Source: Chrysemys picta bellii
Taxonomy: Eukaryota
Direction of reading: 5' to 3'
DNA: 64,000 nt
NCBI RefSeq assembly: GCF_011386835.1
Contig: NC_088791.1
Span: 15,376,001-15,440,000, forward strand
Under the pieces are notes generated by a model. The model was given only the letters and a program-made list of their open reading frames with translations. It did no database searches and was not told where the DNA came from. A program made the translations under genes and the position numbers. Of the stretch, positions 36,142-52,730 are shown one piece after another. The first letter of the stretch is position 1. The number at the start of each line of letters is the position of its first letter.

Positions 36142-37592
36142 TCACAGAAGCACTGATTCATGCATAGACATCCCATCATTTTGGTTTCTGTAGTGCTGGG
36201 CAGGGGCTGGTGGGCCTGAATATTGATATTGTGCTGAACCATGTTCTTCCAAGGTTGGTGAAGTCCTATATCTTATTGGACTATCCACAGAAACAGTTGG
36301 AAGATTATGGTCCTGAAAAGGTGTTGGCTGACTGGCTGCATACTTCTGTAAATTACCCAAGTGGCTTTGGTTAGCATCTTGGTTCCAGGGCTGCCTGTAT
36401 ATCTCATGTCTGTACATATAAGCAGCATCCGGCCTCTTTCTGTTGTCTGGCAAATAATCCACTGGAGGAATTATAAATTTGACACCTGAGGGTGATCTAG
36501 AGTTGCCAGGATAGGCATCAACAGGTAAGACTTCTATTCGACTAGAAGGTGGAGAAATAGGATTTTGGCGATTGGCAGGATAAGAGTTCATATGTGGTTT
36601 ATCTGGAGAAAAATCTGTTGAAAAAACAGAACCATATGGTCTACCAGAAGTGTTGGTTCGATTCCCATGATTATACTGTGACGGTACAAAACTTGCACTA
36701 ATTGCGCTGGAGGCAGGCTTTGGAGTGTTTCCATGGTACGTAGGTGGGTTACTATAAGATGGTGGTGGCTGTTTAACATTTGATCTGTGATCTGACCCAT
36801 CAGACTGAGATGAATATCTTGGGCTTCTCTGTTGGGAACTGATGGCATAATTGTTGGATATTTTTAGTGGGCCAGGAATTTTTGCACCTTGCTTTCTAGG
36901 ACTACTAGAGTATGTTACATTCCTGGGACTTTGTGGATGAGCTCTTTCTAGCATCTCCTCAACAGGATTCTCATTCTCATGGTCAACACCTGGAATATTG
37001 TCATACTGCGATGCGTTAGACCCTCGCTTACCTCCATCAGCATCCAAACCCCTCATCTTTTGCTTTACATTCAATGGCTGTGGTTCACCAGGACTTGGTG
37101 GTGTCCCTGAAATAGCATGGTTTACTGACCTACCTTTTACCTCCACGGTAAGTTTTGTAGTCTTTTCAATAACTTTGATATCTGAAGGTTTATTCCATTT
37201 AGGTACAAATCCCCTTCTTGTATCTGAAGTAGCATTAGAATTTTGGTTAGCAGCTGCATTGTTATATTGTCTAGAATTGTCTTGTACTGTTGACTGAGGC
37301 TTTTTTCTGATATCTACGTCATTCTTAGATAGCTCACTCCGGACTGCTGGTCCAGGCTTTTGTTGTTTTAAAGAAGGCTTCTTTTCCAGTGAATTAATTC
37401 TTCTTCGGTTATTTGGTGAATCTTCTTGTACTTTTTCAGGAGATAGTCTCCTTTCTGTCCTTCTTGCTGTCTGTGTTCTTGAAATACTAGTGTTGCTCTG
37501 TCCATTGAGCATATGAGTAAGATTAAGCACGGCAGGCTGAGGTTCCAATAGAATTTGTCCCAACGGCTTCTTTGGAAATTCATCTTCTTTAC
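36142..37592 (-). CDS. USP6NL: USP6NL (RN-tre) terminal coding exon; long low-complexity C-terminal tail
   Basis: Acceptor TTTTTTAG|GTAAAGAAGAT (phase 1, GKEDEFPKKPLGQ). Motifs QYNNAAANQNSNATS, FVPKWNKPSD, GKRGSNASQYDN, PPSYSNPPTYHGN, SRIEVLPVD, IIPPVDYLPDNR, PFQDHNLPTVSVDSP.RY and C-terminal ESVLL* match human USP6NL as recalled. TGA at 36142-36144. Confidence 0.97.
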
Positions 37593-37655
37593 CTAAAAAA
37601 TAAGTAATAAAGTAAATTGAAGTTTTTTCATATGGAACTCTGCGTGTGTGTTAAA

Positions 37656-37657
37656 CA

Positions 37658-37708
<51 letters not shown>
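37656..37708. repeat. (CT)n(CA)n compound microsatellite near the terminal-exon acceptor
   Basis: Direct reading. Confidence 0.9.
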
Positions 37709-37709
<1 letters not shown>

Positions 37710-38268
37710 ATAAAAGACAAAAGTCCAGACAGCCAAATTCAACTCTGGATTTAGATCTCAGACCCAAAGTTCAGTTATATTTGGATCTAGGGTTTTTGTT
37801 CTGGTCTATATATAATGTCTAAGGTATGGGTCTGTTTTACCACTGTTATACTGAACATTGTGGAAAGAAGTACAACTGAGAACTGTCATGTCATTTTTAC
37901 ATTACTGCTGTTTGGGAAAGCAACTAGCAGTGGACTACTGGAGTATTCATGGAGGGGACCCTCTTCATCCCCACAAAAACCTCGTGGGCAGGAGTAGATT
38001 AGGAAGTCCCATTCCACCAAAGTAGTTAAGAGGCTCTGGAGGAAGGGGAAAGAGATAGATAGAAAATGAAGACTTCAATTTTATTAGTGACCTTCTACCT
38101 TGAGTCCATAACAGAGGTTGAGGGACAAAACCTTGGTAAGAATCCCAGTCCAATCCTCCTGCTCAGCAGTTGAAGGTGAGCTGCTGAGTTTCTCACAAGC
38201 CCATCATGAGTATGAGCTCATACTTCTTCCTTATTAGGTTTAGACCACTGGCTTGCAGCTGTCTGGCA

Positions 38269-38405
38269 NNNNNNNNNNNNNNNNNNNNNNNNNNNNNNNN
38301 NNNNNNNNNNNNNNNNNNNNNNNNNNNNNNNNNNNNNNNNNNNNNNNNNNNNNNNNNNNNNNNNNNNNNNNNNNNNNNNNNNNNNNNNNNNNNNNNNNNN
38401 NNNNN
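38269..38405. other. Assembly gap (137 N)
   Basis: Run of N; its true length and content are unknown. Confidence 0.99.
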
Positions 38406-39665
38406 GAGTCAAAAATAAATTCAGCATATAAATGCTTGTTTCTTAACTTTGTTAGTATAAGTATGCAATCAGGTGTGCAGTTATGTTAGACAACTATACC
38501 ATGCGAGGTGAAACACAAGGCCAAGAGACTTCTAAACACAAGAAAAATGGGTATCCAGTGTAGCTATACACCCAAAGTATGCAAGAGCTTTTAATTTTTA
38601 AACACAAATTTTTTGTTAAACACTGAACAGTAAGTTCACTAAAACTGACTAATGGTTACATTAGATAGTTACACTTAAATGCTTTGTCAGCCAATCAGCC
38701 TCTTTTCATAATGACCCTATTAAAAATGTACAGTATAGCTAAAAGATTATGCTTACCACCTTCATTTTTTAACTTCAGTTCTTTTTTATGATCATTGTAG
38801 TTTGAAGAGAATTTATTTAAATATCTAGGTACTACTAAGGTCCCCATCACCACAGAATCTGAATGCCAAATAGGAACACTAATATTTCTGTTCTGACAAA
38901 GATGGCAGTAAAAGACAACAGCATTTACTTAAGAGCAGCATATAAGTGGAGAGTTCTCTTTTGGTTATGAGCACAACATATCTTCCATCATTCAATGTTT
39001 AAATGTCAGTCTCTTAAGGGGACACAATATTCCAGATTGCAACCATGTAAAAACTTAATTATAAACAGAGAAATGAGAGCTATACAGACTGTCTGATAAT
39101 GCCCATATGACTATTTATACCAACATTTCTGTTCAAATTACTCTCTCCTTTCAAAGCAGTCAGAGCTATTTTCCCATTCTAAATTAATACTAGTAAATAA
39201 GTTATTTCCACACCTCATAAAATTGTAGCTTCCCTACTTACGTACAGCAATTTCTTTCAGATTATAAATAGAAAAAAGTTAAGTATGTAATTTTTAAATG
39301 CATCCCCCACACAATCTGTTTGAAAATTTGCCTGTAACTTTTAAAAATCAGACAGGATAGCCAAATAAACTCTATCATATATCAGTTTACTAAGTAAAAA
39401 CTGCAAGGCCAGAAAAAAAAGCCCTGGTTTTGCTGAAAAATTATATAGAAAAGCTATGTAAAATTGTTGGTAGAGAAATAATTTAGTGTTTTGATCCTCA
39501 TTGCTGCACTAGAGACACAGGACCATGCAACTTTTCTCTATCACTGGAAAATCTGAAGTTAAAAGTTAACATCTCATCATCACCAGTTATTTGTATGAAC
39601 AATTCATTCTGCATCTCTGTATAGTGCACCTGAACGAACACTCAGACATACTTGTGTCTCTAAAA

Positions 39666-40000
39666 CAGGGATCGTCAACCTTTGGCACGTGGCCTGCCAA
39701 GGTAAGCACCCTGGCGGGCCAGGCCAGTTTGTTTACCTACCGCTTCCACAGGTTTGGCCAATTGCAGCTCCCACTGGCCGCGGTTCGCAGCTCCAGGCCA
39801 ATGGGGGCAGCGGGAAGCGGCAGCCAGCACATCCCTTGGCCCGCGCCGCTTCCCGCAGTCTCCATTGGCCTGGAGCAGCAAACCGCAGCCACTGGGAGCC
39901 GCGATCGGCCAAACCTGTGGACGCGGCAGGTAAACAAACCGGCCTGACCCACCAGGGTGCTTACCCTGGCCGGCCACGTGCCAAAGGTTGCCGATCCCTG
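39666..40000. mobile_element. Near-perfectly palindromic hAT MITE (335 bp)
   Basis: CAGGGATCGTCAACCTTTGGCACGTGGC ... GCCACGTGCCAAAGGTTGCCGATCCCTG. Exact 8-bp TSD CTCTAAAA at 39658-39665 and 40001-40008. Confidence 0.95.
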
Positions 40001-41616
40001 CTCTAAAATATAATGTTTAGAAGTATTAATAGCGTCATGGAAATTGTACAAACAATATGAGTTAAATCTTTGACAGCTGATTCTCATTAAAGGGGGATGG
40101 CAGAAACTGAGATTATCATTGGATAGCACATAGGAACTGCCATCAAGGATCAGGGCCACATCATGCTAGATTCTGCATAGGCAAATAAAAACAGAATTTA
40201 CAGTCTAGGTGTCAGACAGGAGGTGACAGGTCCACAAAACAGAAACGTGATGAGGGTGGGCGAGATGACAAAGTAACAAAATGAGAGTTTAACAGAGAAG
40301 TCTCTGTTTGCTGCTTGCCTAACTAATGCCAGTTTCATAGTTATTGTATGCTGGTGGTCATTCTCATTCTGCTCCAAATGAAGTCTACAGTATTGTGTAA
40401 GGTCAAACTTACCCCCTGCCTGAGGTCTTGCTGCAGTAGTAATTTAAAACAAACGTCAGCCTAAACTTAATCCTTCCAGCCTGACTGTTCTTAAGTTTTC
40501 TCGTGTCTATCACTGGTTTCACTCCAATCAGGTGGTCTCAAAACTTGGCAGAGTTAACAAGCTTCCTGCCACAAAGAGTCAGCAGAATCCACTCAGCTGA
40601 TTTATGCAGGGCACTAACCCCTGCTAGCCTGATAGGTCACAGAAGAGTCCAGCATCCCTATGCAGAGGGGTCGATCGTGCCACTCTGTTACAGTTATATT
40701 TCAAAAGAAGGTAAGTGAACCTTTCAAGCTGACGATTAAGAAAATAAAGTTAAGTTAGAATTGTTTTCCCCACAAATTTCCAAGACACAGAAAAAGACAT
40801 AAAAAAGAGAAACTATGAAGGGGCTAATAGCAAATCCATAAATGTCTTAGAAAACCTCAATCAGCAAGTGCACTCAAATCGCACAGACGACATGATCAGT
40901 AAGAAAGAACTGACTGCTTTTCTGCATGGCTCTGTTTTTTTTTTTTTTTTTTAAACAATCCATATAGAGTACATAGAAACTATGATGACAGGTGCTTTAA
41001 GAATGCTGAGAGATTTCTTCATAACGATGGCTTTCCAAGACAATATACTGAACACTACATCACACAGTTAAAAAAATTGTCCCATATTCTTTTTGTCCCC
41101 TCTGTAGGGGGTGGAATTCACTCCCTACAGAGGCTCTGCAAAACCTTTAAATCATTTATGTCCCACTTACGCCCTCCAACTAGGGTGTATGCAGGACTTA
41201 AGACCTTGTGCTTGTCTTCTGCACAGGGATGAATTTCACCCTTAATAAATATTCCAACACCAGAGCCATATGTCGTTAGTTTTTCCCATCTTATTTGTCT
41301 CAATGAATTTTTTTAAATTAAGTAGTACAGCATTTCAGAAAAATGAAGCAATTCTGTGTAATACTAAATTGTCTATTTTAATGATAAGAATGAAGTCTGA
41401 ATCGGGAAGTAAATACATACAATATGCCCTTCAAAAAAAAAGTTTGTGTAAATTATACAGAAGTGATCTTGGTTTTATATGCTGTTAAGTAGTTTGCAAC
41501 TTTCAGGTGATCCATCAGGTGTTATGGGATGTTGTAAGAAAATGGCCCATCAGTAACTATAATGATGTAATTTTTACACAGATAATTTAATGTGCTTGTA
41601 TGCAATAAACATTATT

Positions 41617-41677
41617 GGGGGTTGGACTAGATGACCTCTTGAGGTCCCTTCCAACTCTGATATTCTATGATATTCTA
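41617..41677 (+). mobile_element. CR1 3' tail fragment
   Basis: GGGTTGGACTAGATGACCTCTTGAGGTCCCTTCCAACTCTGATATTCTATGATATTCTA. Confidence 0.85.
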
Positions 41678-43018
41678 AACCTCTTAAGAAAAAATGGTCC
41701 TCCTTTGTCAATAATGTCTTCCATGCTTGAAATATAAGTATTCAATCTATTTTTAAACAATAAATAGTTGCATTCATATTTAAATATGCATTCCAGTGCT
41801 CTTCCAGTACCTACATCAATGCTTTCTGTATTTGCATATACACATTTAAAAGCATCAACTGTTTTCCCTTCTCTTTCAGTCTTGAAGAAATTCACATAGA
41901 GCAGATTGGAATCCTTTGAAATGTGCTTGGTTGAACAATAAGTTTTTTGTTTTTTTTAATTCGACACACTTAAGGTCTCTTAATTACCATTAAGCTTTCA
42001 TAAAACCCAAGCGAGAATATTGCAGACATTTTTTATTGAATTCTACATTGCTTTGAAGATTATTTTCTGTAATCTTTCTCGCATGGTTCACAGTAACCGA
42101 GTGCATTAGCATTGGTGTGTGTGGTTTATATGATGTATGCAATAACCTGAATTATAGTCATAAAAAGGATGTCAGAACAACCCTACACCGTAATATTAGT
42201 TATGGAACACTATTGTGAAGCTGTTAAACTTTAGACTGAATGTTAAGACCAGAGTAACAGCCAAAATGTTCCAAGCCTACAACTGTTCTTTCGAAAGATA
42301 AAACCGTGGGCATTCTAATAACGTGATACCAGGCTTTTACTTTCTATGACTTGATGACACTGGAGCTTAGAGTCTGCATAGAAACAAAAGATAAGATATA
42401 GGATGAAAAAAGACAGAGCTTTATATCTTCATCATAAAGCCTCCACACAACACAAATTAACTTGGCCTCGCACTCAAACATCGAAAATCTTGTCTGGATC
42501 AGCAGAGTATTGGAGTACAAGAAGCATTTGTACTCCAACCTTTAGATACAGCCACTTTACTAAACTCTGTTAGCTATGCTCCGTTTTCCTAACAGGTAAA
42601 GCAGCAAAACACATACCTGGATCCTAGGCTCAGTCATGCTCAGATTAATATTCACTAAGGTTTGCCCACCTCTTACCATAACACAACCAAGGCTAAAGAC
42701 ATCATCAAAAGTGATGGGGTAGTGGCATAGTCCAATAACAAGAATCTTACAGCATAAAGGCATATTCCAAACCACTGCCACCTCCTACAAAAAGAACACT
42801 GTTTTAAGCTATAAACAGACTATATTTAATTAGGGTGTTGGTCACTCCCAGTAAATCCACAATCATTCTTAGGGGCTACCAACTGCATTAGATGCCAAGA
42901 ATAATTTATTGCCCTTGAAAACAATAAGAGCTCTTAAATTTAACCTAAAATTAAAGAAAATGAAATCCTTTGAGGCACATGAAATAAAAACAGGAAGAAT
43001 AATTTGCACACCCATCAC

Positions 43019-43070
43019 CATGCATATTAATGCAAATATATATGGCTCAAACTCACAAAGAAAGCATGCA
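43019..43070 (-). promoter_or_regulatory. Two UGCAUG (RBFOX) elements downstream of the candidate cassette exon
   Basis: CATGCA on + at 43065-43070 and 43019-43024, i.e. about 44 and 90 nt into the intron after the 43114 donor in transcript orientation. Confidence 0.6.
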
Positions 43071-43113
43071 AATCATGTACATGAATGTTGTGAAAAAGCC
43101 AGAGATAAAATAC

Positions 43114-43164
43114 CAGGAGACACTTGGGGGGTAGTAGCGAACAGGAAGACCACGATGTCGGGTG
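43114..43164 (-). CDS. USP6NL: Candidate alternative 51-nt in-frame exon of USP6NL (APDIVVFLFATTPQVSP)
   Basis: Acceptor TTTTTCTTTTTCCTCTGTTCCTACCAG|, donor CTG|GTATTT. 51 nt, phase 1 to 1, matching the flanking exons; no stop. Inclusion in transcripts not verified. Confidence 0.6.
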
Positions 43165-46100
43165 CTGGTAGGAACAGAGGAAAAAGAAAAACAGGTTCAT
43201 ATCCTCACCTCTAAAAAAAGCAAAATGAGAAAAAAAATAAAAAGAAATACCCAGAGTGAAAGAGCAAGCAAATAACCATAGAAACAGAGAGAGAGGGAGA
43301 GAGCGAGCGCAAGCCCCTCTGTTGAGAAGAAGTATGCAAATAAAACATCTCATGACTTGTCACGGTAACATGCCAAATATTCCTTTGCAAGTTCTGCATC
43401 ATGTTCCACCACACTTCAGCCTAAAGCTTCACCTGCAGCCTCAGCCATGCTTTCACCTTGACCCCTTCAACTGCGATTTTTAAGCTCAATTGTTAAGAGT
43501 CCCCAGAGCTGAACCCCTAAGAATTAGCAACAGGGTGTTCTCAGTGTTGCTGCCTTAACTGGAATTAGTTTCCACCATTGGCCCAAAGATTGAGTTTACT
43601 AACATTCAGGGCACATTCACTTGTTTGACTGCAGGGCACATTTTGATCGAGTTAACAGTTGTTTCTGGGCTGGGAATTGTTATATAGTTTACAGAGGTTA
43701 ACAAATCTTCTCTAAGATGCATTTGCACCAAACGATAATATTAATAGGGCAACTGAAAAAAAAAAAACAGAAAATATGAAGTGGAAACTGTCAGCTGGTG
43801 GCTGTTTTGGCAGCAGCAATTAACAGTATTATTGCCCAAATGTGCTGGTTTTGTTTTCTCAAGCTTTCTGGGCAACTGGATTTTTCTTAGCCTGCCATAA
43901 TTAGATGCATAGTGAGGTGTGAAATTGTATTCTTATTCCTCCTCCCCTTTAACATACCAAGAAACTAAACAAAACGTTTAATTATTGGGCCTTCCTCAAA
44001 AGGAATCGGATAGAAACTCTGCATGAGAAACGACACAGTTGATACTGTGCCATTTTTTGTGTGGAAGCGTGTAATGATTTGGTTATCCTGTGTCTAAAGT
44101 TAGGGGAGTCCATGCAGCAGCAGTACAAAAAACCAGAGAGAGCAGCAAAAAAACGGGGGAAAACAAAGAAGTCAATACAACTAGTCCTAAAATGATCTGA
44201 AATTAGAGTCATATTAAAAGGGTTTTTATTCTACTGACTTACTCTTGATCTAAAAAGTCTCTGTCACCACCCAGTGGAAATCAATCCCAACTACAAGACT
44301 TTACAGATTAATTGCTTCAGCAGGCACTAACAGCTTCTTGCATTGAATAACAGACATATAATTGGACTAAAGTGCTTTAAGTGCTCTCTCCGGTGAATAA
44401 CAGTCTAGTCCTTAATTTCAGCACAAGCATATACACACTTTGTTCTAATACAGTTTTCAAGCATAGTAAAGGGTCAGAAAAATTATTCAGTTAAAATGAC
44501 ATCTTGGTATTTTGTGTTTATTTAGCATCAGTGACTTTCTCCATCTTATTTGCTCCATTTAAGAGTCAAAAAGGACTTTTTAAAATGTTACTGCTTGTAC
44601 TGGACGTTCAAACTGCTATCAGAAAGTCAGACTAGCTTCTTGCTCCTCAAAATGCCATCATCAACAAAAGGGGATTCTGGAGTTATAACTTGGATGGCAA
44701 TTTTGATGATGGAGCATGAGGCAGATGAGAATACACAGTTTGCTTTTCTGTAGCTATATTAGGTTTGCAGTGCTGATGGTTGCAAAAACTCACTTTTTAA
44801 TTATAAACATTTGTATTTAGATTAAAAACAATGCAATTAGTGAAAAATGCTTAACAGACTTCCAGGATAGTTTTGTGTCAAAGCAAGGTGACTTTTTATA
44901 GTCATTTTCTAGTTATAATCACATTACATTTTATATCACTAATTCTTACATTTCTTGAGAAAAATTGCACTGAAAGATTCAGTAAAAAAACTGTGAACCA
45001 CCAGCTGCATCATAATTTCATTTATAGCGATATAAAAATGTGCAAACTAAAGAGGTCAAGCAATAAAAGATTTTTAAACAGTGCAGAACCAATATATAAA
45101 ATTGCTGGAAATAACACCATTCCATGCTCTACTATCCTTTTATAATATCAGAAAATACACATCAGACAAGCACTAGAAAAATTATAGGAAACACATGATA
45201 GAAATGCATTTTGGTTTAGTTGGTTAATAAATAAAATGCAGTACAAAAATTAAAAAATAGCTACGTTTGTTTTCTCCAAACATATAAATGAAAAATCCCA
45301 AATTCCTCTGAAACAAAAAACAATAGAAGATGCATAGCATCAGAAATAGTAAATCAAGCAGAGTTTCATAATTTTGTTGCCTTACTTGTCAGTGTCGTAA
45401 GATGCATTTCACTGTCTAACGTTTACAGCTAACGACATACATCCTTTGGCAGATTATCACTAAATTATTACATACACGGCTGCAGAATTAATAGAAAAAT
45501 ATTAAACTGAAAAACAAAATCTGTGAAAAACATAATATTCAAACTTTCCACTATTTTTTCCGCACACAGAAAAGCGAGACATGTGGGTGCAACTGAGGCA
45601 GCCAAACTTTAAAGCAAGGGTTACTACACACACAGAGTGTAAAATGACTAAGCGGACAAAGGCAGATTCTAAGTTTGGAATTTGACAGAAATAGTGCCTA
45701 TGTAAAAGTGGAGCAGTGCCTATTAGATGACCTCAGGAGAAATTTTCAGCTACTTTAAATTGGTGTAGCTCCATTGAAGGCTTTACAGACATGAAGAAAT
45801 GTGAGATTTGGGTCACAGGATGATTTTTTGGGCCTCTTTTGTACTTTGTGGGTCACAATATGGATGGTAGGTGACTGCAAGAGTGGACTTCAGGATCTTC
45901 GAATTTTGAAATCTGACCTGACTGACTTGTTCAGGAACTTTAGACTCAGAATCCAGTTTCCACCCAACTACCTAAGGTCTACAGAGAAGGTAGAGGCAAG
46001 CCTCTTGGAAGCACATTGATTTTGTTACTGGTTCTATGACTAAGAGAATAGGTGGGAAGTTATTCCCATAATTTAGGAGCATTTCAAAGGATTTTTTTTG

Positions 46101-52577: not shown

Positions 52578-52730
52578 CAGCTGCTGGTAGATCCAACTTT
52601 GCTCGTTTCAGTTCAGACATCGAATTTTGGAGCTGCTCTATTACAAAGTCATCTTCTAAGAAGAAATCCTTGGCTAGAGTCTCCTGAAGGAATTCTACAA
52701 GTTCTTCCATTTGTAATTTCAGCAGATGTT
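52578..52730 (-). CDS. USP6NL: USP6NL penultimate constitutive coding exon (end of the TBC-domain region), 153 nt
   Basis: Acceptor CCAATCTAG|AACAT, donor GCTG|GTAAGA, phase 1 to 1. Encodes (K)[50 protein letters not shown](G). Confidence 0.97.

What the first reader, a model, noticed from the sequence alone, without database searches (positions are those of the whole stretch)
43019..43190. In-frame 51-nt cassette exon candidate with two downstream RBFOX motifs
Seen: a long pyrimidine tract (TTTTTCTTTTTCCTCTGTTCCTACCAG), then 51 nt (43164 to 43114) and donor CTG|GTATTT. The length is a multiple of 3 and phase 1 to 1 matches the flanking exons, inserting APDIVVFLFATTPQVSP between ...LDLPAA and GKEDEF with no stop. 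It keeps 3 CpGs in an otherwise CpG-poor intron. UGCAUG lies ~44 and ~90 nt downstream. Established: UGCAUG downstream of an exon is the RBFOX1/2/3 inclusion-promoting position in neurons and muscle. Inference: a tissue-specific USP6NL isoform with a hydrophobic and Thr/Ser-Pro insert. I do not know whether it is already annotated.
Basis: partly seen in the sequence, partly recalled or inferred. Interest (0 to 1): 0.7.

Follow-up and report, generated by a model that had tools for sequence, protein, structure and literature searches.

The report
Conserved reptile USP6NL alternative exon
The 51-base segment is a genuine, anciently conserved alternative exon of the painted turtle's USP6NL gene that adds 17 amino acids; automatic gene models of a sea turtle and a lizard already carry it, so it is real but fairly ordinary, and control by RBFOX is plausible but untested.

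Summary
The window is Chrysemys picta bellii USP6NL on the minus strand.

**Evidence that the exon is real**
- RefSeq isoforms X1 and X5 of Lepidochelys kempii carry exactly LDLPAA-APDIVVFLFATTPQVSP-GKEDEF.
- The lizard Elgaria has the same 17-residue insert, 13/17 identical.
- The gecko Paroedura keeps the exon in its DNA: 46/51 bases, AG, GTATTTT, the frame and all three CpGs.
- Four birds keep only a shortened copy that is out of frame or carries a stop.

**RNA evidence in the turtle itself**
- In one of four RNA-type runs, a contig joins the donor at 43114 to the last exon at 37592.
- That contig starts at an upstream AG (43212-43211). This gives a 97-nt exon with a stop in the USP6NL frame.
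- The 51-nt form itself was not seen in Chrysemys RNA.

**RBFOX motifs**
- Each of the two UGCAUG motifs is kept, at least as the GCAUG core, in 5 of 6 sauropsid genomes.
- Tissue specificity and RBFOX dependence could not be tested.

No paper found describes the exon. Verdict: a real alternative exon of a known kind, of modest interest.

The parts
43114..43164 (-). 51-nt cassette exon, phase 1 to 1, encoding (A)PDIVVFLFATTPQVSP
   Evidence: Sequence read. The identical peptide is in L. kempii XP_073184875.1 and XP_073184884.1. It is 13/17 identical in Elgaria P0136. It is 46/51 nt identical at gecko L003:34524-34574.
43165..43190 (-). Pyrimidine tract and AG acceptor (AG at 43166-43165) of the 51-nt form
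   Evidence: The tract is 89% pyrimidine, 99th percentile of the intron's AG sites. It is conserved in the gecko, and CCAG is kept in 3 of 4 birds. No Chrysemys contig was seen spliced at this AG.
43105..43113 (-). Weak donor GTATTTTAT (GT at 43113-43112)
   Evidence: The joint 43114 to 37592 is seen in run X10; the tool reports it as 37589/43111 with cut +3 and skipped ends CT..AC. GTATTTT is identical in the gecko.
43065..43070 (-). Proximal UGCAUG, 44 nt downstream of the donor
   Evidence: Kept in all 4 birds, lost in the gecko.
43019..43024 (-). Distal UGCAUG, 90 nt downstream of the donor
   Evidence: Kept in 3 of 4 birds. The core GCAUG is kept in the gecko.
43165..43212 (-). Upstream alternative acceptor (AG at 43212-43211) and 46-nt extension, giving a 97-nt exon 43210-43114. 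In the USP6NL frame it reads G|AG GTG AGG ATA TGA, with the stop at 43199-43197.
   Evidence: The X10 contig covers 43210-43111 and stops exactly beside the AG, and 73 more of its letters lie nowhere in the stretch (tables 5 and 8). The tract is 89% pyrimidine. This acceptor is not conserved in the gecko or in birds.
52578..52730 (-). Penultimate coding exon (153 nt, phase 1 to 1), ending ...[10 protein letters not shown]
   Evidence: It matches the USP6NL proteins. It is itself skipped in Chrysemys isoforms X5 and X6.
36145..37592 (-). Last coding exon (G)KEDEFPKKPLG... up to the last codon before the stop
   Evidence: It is 100% identical to the Chrysemys picta bellii USP6NL isoforms.
43285..43306 (-). 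CU-rich tract (ctcgctctctccctctctctctg) upstream of both acceptors. It looks like a PTBP-type repressor site, but this is inference only.
   Evidence: Sequence. Not tested, and not aligned in the gecko.

Best explanation
Positions 43164-43114 on the minus strand are a genuine alternative exon in the last intron of USP6NL (RN-tre, a Rab GTPase-activating protein). The exon dates back at least to the common ancestor of turtles and squamates.

Including the 51-nt form inserts 17 residues. The invariant positions are P-D-x-V-V-F-x-x-A-T-x-P-Q-x-S-P. The insert sits about 28 residues after the end of the TBC-domain match and directly before the long, low-complexity C-terminal tail. It does not change the frame.

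The exon has a strong pyrimidine tract and a weak donor (GTATTT), so its inclusion should depend on auxiliary elements. The best candidates are the two UGCAUG motifs at +44 and +90, a position from which RBFOX proteins are known to promote inclusion.

In the painted turtle a second acceptor 46 nt upstream yields a 97-nt version. This version stops translation after LDLPAA-EVRI, 83 nt before the last exon junction, so it is a predicted target of nonsense-mediated decay (NMD) or gives a tail-less protein.

Shown: the exon's conservation, its annotation in relatives, use of its donor, and the upstream acceptor. Inferred: RBFOX control, tissue specificity, and any effect of the insert on the protein.
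For: - **Species and gene.** The last exon is 100% identical to Chrysemys picta bellii USP6NL.
- **Same insert in a sea turtle.** The identical insert is in L. kempii RefSeq isoforms X1 (884 aa) and X5 (780 aa).
- **Related insert in a lizard.** Elgaria multicarinata P0136 reads LDLPVA-VPDTVVFLFATIPQASP-GKDDEI.
- **Gecko DNA.** At L003:34524-34574 the order is AG, then 51 nt, then GTATTTT. The exon is 90% identical, in frame with the gecko's own phase-1 flanking exons, and keeps all 3 CpGs. It scores 84% identity, the second-highest among intronic turtle-gecko matches after a repeat-derived hit, and the match is centred on the exon, at 43190-43092.
- **RNA junction.** The joint 43114 to 37592 is in a contig of run X10. 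In that run the last-exon contig breaks at 37593, as expected where two upstream partners exist. In X5 and X7 the contig runs straight on into upstream exon sequence, which is the skipped form.
- **Motifs.** Each UGCAUG (or its GCAUG core) is kept in 5 of 6 sauropsid genomes. Only 0.36% of 100-nt windows in the intron hold two.
- **Splice signals.** Weak donor and strong acceptor tracts.
- **Position in the protein.** The Pfam TBC matches end at residues 337 and 357, and the insert is at residues 385-401 of P0133.
Against: - No Chrysemys contig shows the 51-nt form. The single spliced contig has the 97-nt form, and 3 of 4 runs show no inclusion. Contigs drop rare variants, so this does not show absence.
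- The Chrysemys isoforms I could see (X4, X5, X6) lack the insert. X1 to X3 were not visible.
- Turtle versus gecko shows 4 amino-acid-changing and 1 silent difference. The constraint is therefore as much on the RNA sequence as on the protein.
- The intron holds many other turtle-bird conserved blocks, so conservation of the flank is not specific to splicing.
- The proximal UGCAUG is absent in the gecko, which keeps the exon. Both motifs persist in most birds, which have lost the coding exon.
- None of about 160 bird, crocodilian and other turtle proteins examined has the insert.
- No tissue information was available.
Confidence: 0.8

Rival explanations
1. The element works mainly as a poison exon. 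Its function would be to lower USP6NL output, or to make a tail-less protein, through the out-of-frame 97-nt form in the turtle and short out-of-frame remnants in birds. The 17-residue insert would be a by-product.
For: - The only spliced Chrysemys contig is the 97-nt form, with a stop 83 nt before the last junction.
- Silent sites are as conserved as amino-acid-changing ones between turtle and gecko.
- Birds keep the acceptor (3 of 4) and the UGCAUG motifs, and the two tinamous have a GT donor, although the remnant is out of frame or carries a stop.
Against: - The upstream acceptor is not conserved in the gecko or in birds.
- Turtle, anguid lizard and gecko all keep exactly 51 nt, in frame and free of stops, over a very long divergence.
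- The RefSeq pipeline modelled the in-frame form in two species.
Confidence: 0.15
2. It is a conserved non-coding element, such as an enhancer, in an intron rich in such elements. It would only by coincidence be flanked by AG and GT and open in frame, and the protein models would be annotation artefacts.
For: The last intron holds several long turtle-bird conserved blocks: 47668-46926, 44828-44190 and 42176-41817. The ratio of amino-acid-changing to silent changes is not low.
Against: - A spliced junction from its GT to the last exon exists in RNA-derived contigs.
- The conserved block between turtle and gecko is centred on the exon with its splice sites.
- Length, frame and splice dinucleotides are kept in three reptile lineages.
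Confidence: 0.04
3. It is a chance pseudo-exon with no function.
For: By sequence criteria alone, 1 to 6 such in-frame AG..GT candidates are expected in this intron. The donor is weak.
Against: All the comparative and RNA evidence above.
Confidence: 0.01

Closest known systems
RefSeq predicted USP6NL isoforms with the same insert: Lepidochelys kempii X1 (XP_073184875.1) and X5 (XP_073184884.1), and the Elgaria multicarinata webbii USP6NL model (P0136)
   Same: The junction is the same (after LDLPAA or LDLPVA, before GK[ED]DE). The length is the same, 17 residues. The peptide is identical in the sea turtle and 13/17 identical in the lizard.
   Different: These are automatic models in other species. 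Nothing is published on their expression or function. The Chrysemys isoforms that I could see lack the insert.
RBFOX-activated cassette exons of neurons and muscle, with (U)GCAUG in the downstream intron (established knowledge)
   Same: Two UGCAUG motifs lie within 100 nt downstream of a weak donor, and both are largely conserved. The exon is short, symmetrical and highly conserved, including at silent sites.
   Different: No binding, knock-down or tissue data exist. The proximal motif is missing in the gecko. The motifs outlive the coding exon in birds.
Poison exons and alternative 3' splice sites coupled to nonsense-mediated decay (established knowledge)
   Same: The 97-nt form carries a stop more than 55 nt before the last exon junction.
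   Different: The upstream acceptor appears to be specific to turtles. No test of decay was possible.

Membership tests
Cassette exon of a protein-coding gene | AG acceptor with a pyrimidine tract, and a GT donor | tested here: met
   Acceptor tract in the 99th percentile. Donor weak, 83rd percentile of the intron's GTs.
Cassette exon of a protein-coding gene | Length a multiple of 3 and open in the frame set by the flanking exons | tested here: met
   51 nt, phase 1 to 1, no stop. The same holds in the gecko.
Cassette exon of a protein-coding gene | Spliced junctions on both sides seen in RNA of this species | tested here: inconclusive
   The donor junction 43114 to 37592 is seen in 1 of 4 runs. 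The acceptor at 43165 is not seen; the contig uses the AG at 43212-43211 instead. Only contigs were available, not raw reads.
Cassette exon of a protein-coding gene | Both included and skipped forms exist | tested here: met
   Skipped form: Chrysemys X4 and the X5 and X7 contigs that run from the last exon into upstream exon sequence. Included form: the X10 contig and the L. kempii and Elgaria models.
Cassette exon of a protein-coding gene | Conserved in orthologues with frame and splice sites intact | tested here: met
   Sea turtle 17/17 aa, Elgaria 13/17 aa, gecko 46/51 nt with AG and GT. Lost as a coding exon in 4 birds.
RBFOX-activated exon | (U)GCAUG in the proximal downstream intron | tested here: met
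   At +44 and +90.
RBFOX-activated exon | Motifs conserved in orthologues | tested here: inconclusive
   Each motif is kept in 5 of 6 genomes. The gecko, which keeps the exon, lacks the proximal one, and birds without a coding exon keep them.
RBFOX-activated exon | Higher inclusion in brain, heart or muscle; RBFOX binding or dependence | not testable with these tools
   Run records were coded and gave no tissue. No CLIP or knock-down data exist for reptiles. No paper was found.
Poison exon coupled to nonsense-mediated decay | Premature stop more than 50-55 nt upstream of the last exon junction | tested here: met
   This holds for the 97-nt form only: TGA at 43199-43197, 83 nt before the junction.
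Poison exon coupled to nonsense-mediated decay | Conservation of the frame-breaking form | tested here: not met
   The upstream acceptor is absent or lacks a pyrimidine tract in the gecko, and the region is deleted in birds.

The most novel reading that the evidence does not exclude
The element could be an ancient sauropsid splice switch at the boundary between the GAP domain and the tail of USP6NL, with three outcomes: full-length protein, protein with a 17-residue hydrophobic and Ser/Thr-Pro insert, or a truncated or decayed message. The same conserved UGCAUG-bearing enhancer would drive all three. Birds would have kept the switch only as a non-coding, output-lowering exon after losing the coding version.
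Probability: 0.15. Interest if true: 0.5.

Novelty: new member of a known kind. Interest (0 to 1): 0.3.

Why it matters
USP6NL (RN-tre) links Rab GTPase inactivation to receptor endocytosis through its C-terminal tail. A conserved, regulated insert or stop exactly at the junction between the catalytic domain and that tail would be a way to tune that link in particular tissues.

The practical gains are modest:
- The painted-turtle annotation may be missing an isoform that relatives already have.
- The exon is a clean example of a coding alternative exon kept for roughly the whole history of turtles and squamates and then lost in birds.

It does not open a new class of mechanism.

Tried and rejected
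- **Turtle and lizard DNA.** The look-up of encoding contigs returned no DNA for L. kempii, Elgaria or Sceloporus because the gene ranges exceed 100 kb. Alligator sinensis X2 and duck X1 were not on record. Nucleotide-level comparison therefore rests on one gecko and four birds.
- **Mammals.** The rodent contig L004 (Neotoma lepida) ends about 1.2 kb after the penultimate exon and does not reach the region. Mammals remain untested. No human sequence was fetched.
- **Short protein fragments.** A word search with a 76-residue piece around the insert found only intron read-through fragments (...PAAGKK...), none with the insert.
- **Structure.** AlphaFold2 on residues 60-470 with a 20-row alignment gave mean pLDDT 34.5. 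I drew no structural conclusion and made no fold search.
- **RNA families.** Rfam found nothing in 39400-43400.
- **Literature.** Papers that mention USP6NL together with splicing, RBFOX or microexons do not describe this exon. PMC5480877 concerns alternative first exons only.
- **Chance pseudo-exon.** Considered and rejected (see the rival explanations).
- **Joined model.** Exons were searched by reference, and the insert was compared through stored proteins. Only in scripts did I complete the split codons with the one and two neighbouring exon letters to read the peptide.
- **Masked run.** The N run at 38269-38405 was left as it is.

Full report
**What the window is.** The long open stretch at 37650-36145 on the minus strand is 100% identical to USP6 N-terminal-like protein isoforms of Chrysemys picta bellii. 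The last three coding parts in view are:
- the penultimate exon, 52730-52578 (153 nt, ending ...[10 protein letters not shown], then g|gtaaga);
- a 14,985-nt intron;
- the last exon, starting at 37592 (ag|gt aaa gaa gat gaa ttt).

Both junctions are phase 1.

**The observation.**
- a pyrimidine tract ending in AG at 43166-43165;
- 51 nt at 43164-43114;
- the donor CTG|GTATTT;
- three CpGs within the exon;
- TGCATG at 43070-43065 and at 43024-43019.

Read in phase 1, the segment gives APDIVVFLFATTPQVSP with no stop.

Within the intron the features are uncommon but not overwhelming.
- CpG observed/expected is 0.21, and 2.3% of 51-nt windows hold three CpGs.
- Only 0.36% of 100-nt windows hold two TGCATG, although the intron as a whole has no excess: 8 found against 5.6 expected.
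- The acceptor tract is in the 99th percentile for pyrimidines.
- The donor is weak on an approximate matrix that I wrote from textbook frequencies: about -1.2 bits, against +4.8 for the neighbouring constitutive donor.
- Depending on the thresholds, 1 to 6 in-frame, stop-free AG..GT candidates of this quality are expected in the intron.

Sequence alone could not settle the question.

**Comparative evidence.** The 90% cluster represented by the Gopherus protein contains two Lepidochelys kempii RefSeq isoforms, X1 (XP_073184875.1, 884 aa) and X5 (XP_073184884.1, 780 aa). Both read ...[33 protein letters not shown]..., which is exactly the predicted insert at exactly the predicted junction.

A search scored on the junction region put the alligator lizard Elgaria multicarinata at the top, because it reads LDLPVA-VPDTVVFLFATIPQASP-GKDDEI.

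For the gecko Paroedura picta the gene is short enough to fetch. Its annotated protein lacks the insert. Its last intron nevertheless holds ...cgtttctcgccag|GACCCGATATCGTGGTCTTCCGGTCCGCTACTACCCCCCAAGCGTCTCCTG|gtattttt at L003:34524-34574.
- This is 46/51 bases identical to the turtle.
- AG, GT and all three CpGs are kept.
- It is in frame with the gecko's own phase-1 flanking exons, reading GPDIVVFRSATTPQASP.
- This match (43190-43092, 84% identity) is among the highest-identity intronic matches between turtle and gecko (exceeded only by a repeat-derived hit) and is centred on the exon with its splice sites.
- Of the five differences, one is silent and four change an amino acid. Both classes are therefore far below neutral expectation, the usual picture for conserved alternative exons, whose RNA sequence is itself constrained.

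Four birds (Calonectris, Tinamus, Odontophorus, Eudromia) keep a recognisable copy. It is about 26 nt shorter and either carries a stop or falls out of frame. In Odontophorus the AG has also been lost. In line with this, none of the roughly 100 bird proteins examined has an insert.

The exon is thus at least as old as the turtle-squamate ancestor and was lost as a coding exon in birds. Crocodilians, tuatara and mammals could not be tested at the DNA level.

**RNA evidence in the turtle.** The look-up of sequencing runs returned only Logan contigs, with coded records and no tissue labels. I laid four runs from four studies on 37450-43300.
- All four hold long contigs that leave the last exon at 37593 for sequence outside the stretch. 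They are therefore RNA-derived.
- In run X10, one 197-nt contig joins 43114 to 37592. The tool reports this as 37589/43111 with cut +3 and skipped ends CT..AC, which is GT..AG on the gene's strand.
- In the same run the last-exon contig breaks at the junction, as expected when two upstream partners are present.
- In X5 and X7 the contig runs straight on into upstream sequence, which is the skipped form.

The X10 contig does not begin at 43164. It continues to 43210 and stops exactly beside the AG at 43212-43211 (ctttttttag|aggtgagg). Another 73 of its letters lie nowhere in the stretch. An unspliced molecule would have aligned on through 43211-43283, so this is a second acceptor.

The resulting 97-nt exon reads G|AG GTG AGG ATA TGA in the USP6NL frame. 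The stop at 43199-43197 lies 83 nt before the last junction, which by the 50-55-nt rule predicts nonsense-mediated decay or else a tail-less protein.

The partner of 43210 is unknown. In a k=31 assembly, 73 unplaced letters is more than a path leaving a shared exon would keep.

In short, the donor is proven in Chrysemys. The 51-nt acceptor is supported only by the relatives' models and by conservation. The upstream acceptor is not conserved in the gecko or in birds.

**Regulation.** Strong acceptor tracts, a weak donor and two downstream UGCAUG motifs fit the established pattern of RBFOX-enhanced exons.
- The proximal motif is kept in all four birds but not in the gecko.
- The distal motif, or its GCAUG core, is kept in the gecko and in three of four birds.
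- This is more conservation than the surrounding block shows.
- It is odd that most birds keep the motifs without a coding exon.
- The intron also holds several other long turtle-bird conserved blocks, so flank conservation is not specific to splicing.

I rate RBFOX control at about even odds. Tissue specificity is untested.

**The protein.** In P0133 the TBC-domain matches end at residues 337 and 357, and the insert is at residues 385-401. It therefore lies just after the last helix region and before the long tail. The structure prediction was too poor to use. Any effect of the hydrophobic core (DxVVF) or of the Ser/Thr-Pro sites is speculation.

**What is known.** The insert is already in two automatic RefSeq models of other reptiles. 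No paper in the held library describes it. Chrysemys isoforms X4 to X6 lack it, and X1 to X3 were not visible to me.

**Verdict.** It comes with a turtle-specific frame-breaking variant and an unproven RBFOX link. Interest is modest.

**House rules.**
- The N run at 38269-38405 was left untouched.
- No human contig was fetched.

Noticed in passing
window 52578-52730 (-): The penultimate exon (153 nt, phase 1 to 1) is itself skipped in the annotated Chrysemys isoforms X5 and X6 and in Mauremys X3 and Apteryx X2, which read ...LKLHRS|KEDEF. This removes the helix that follows the TBC domain.
   Followed up: partly
window 47668-46926, 45379-45211, 44828-44190, 42176-41817 (-): Long non-coding blocks in the last intron are conserved between turtle and birds, at 70-77% identity over up to 790 nt. 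They are far larger than the cassette region and are possibly enhancers.
   Followed up: no
window 41617-41671: A 55-nt piece (…atcagagttggaagggacctcaagaggtcatctagtccaaccccc) has enormous summed depth in all four runs (8,000-79,000) and many copies in the gecko locus L003. It is a fragment of a widespread interspersed repeat. It has no Rfam match.
   Followed up: partly
window 39606-39997: A second stretch has high summed depth (80-1,170) and many variant letters and odd joints in all four runs. It is probably another repeated, transcribed element.
   Followed up: no
window 43210 and upstream; run X10 record 16: 73 letters of the spliced contig lie nowhere in 37450-43300, so the exon or start joined to the acceptor at 43211 is unknown.
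   Followed up: partly
L001:32575-32710, L002:88040-88180, L005:47530-47670, L006:45255-45400: Birds keep a degenerate copy of the exon. It is about 26 nt shorter and has stops or a frameshift. The proximal TGCATG is kept in 4 of 4 and the distal in 3 of 4. The two tinamous have a usable-looking TAG|GTGACA donor, so a short non-coding exon may still be spliced there.
   Followed up: partly
window 37655-37700 and 38269-38405: A (GT)n(GA)n microsatellite lies about 60 nt upstream of the last exon's acceptor. There is also a 137-base run of N in the intron, which was left as it is.
   Followed up: no
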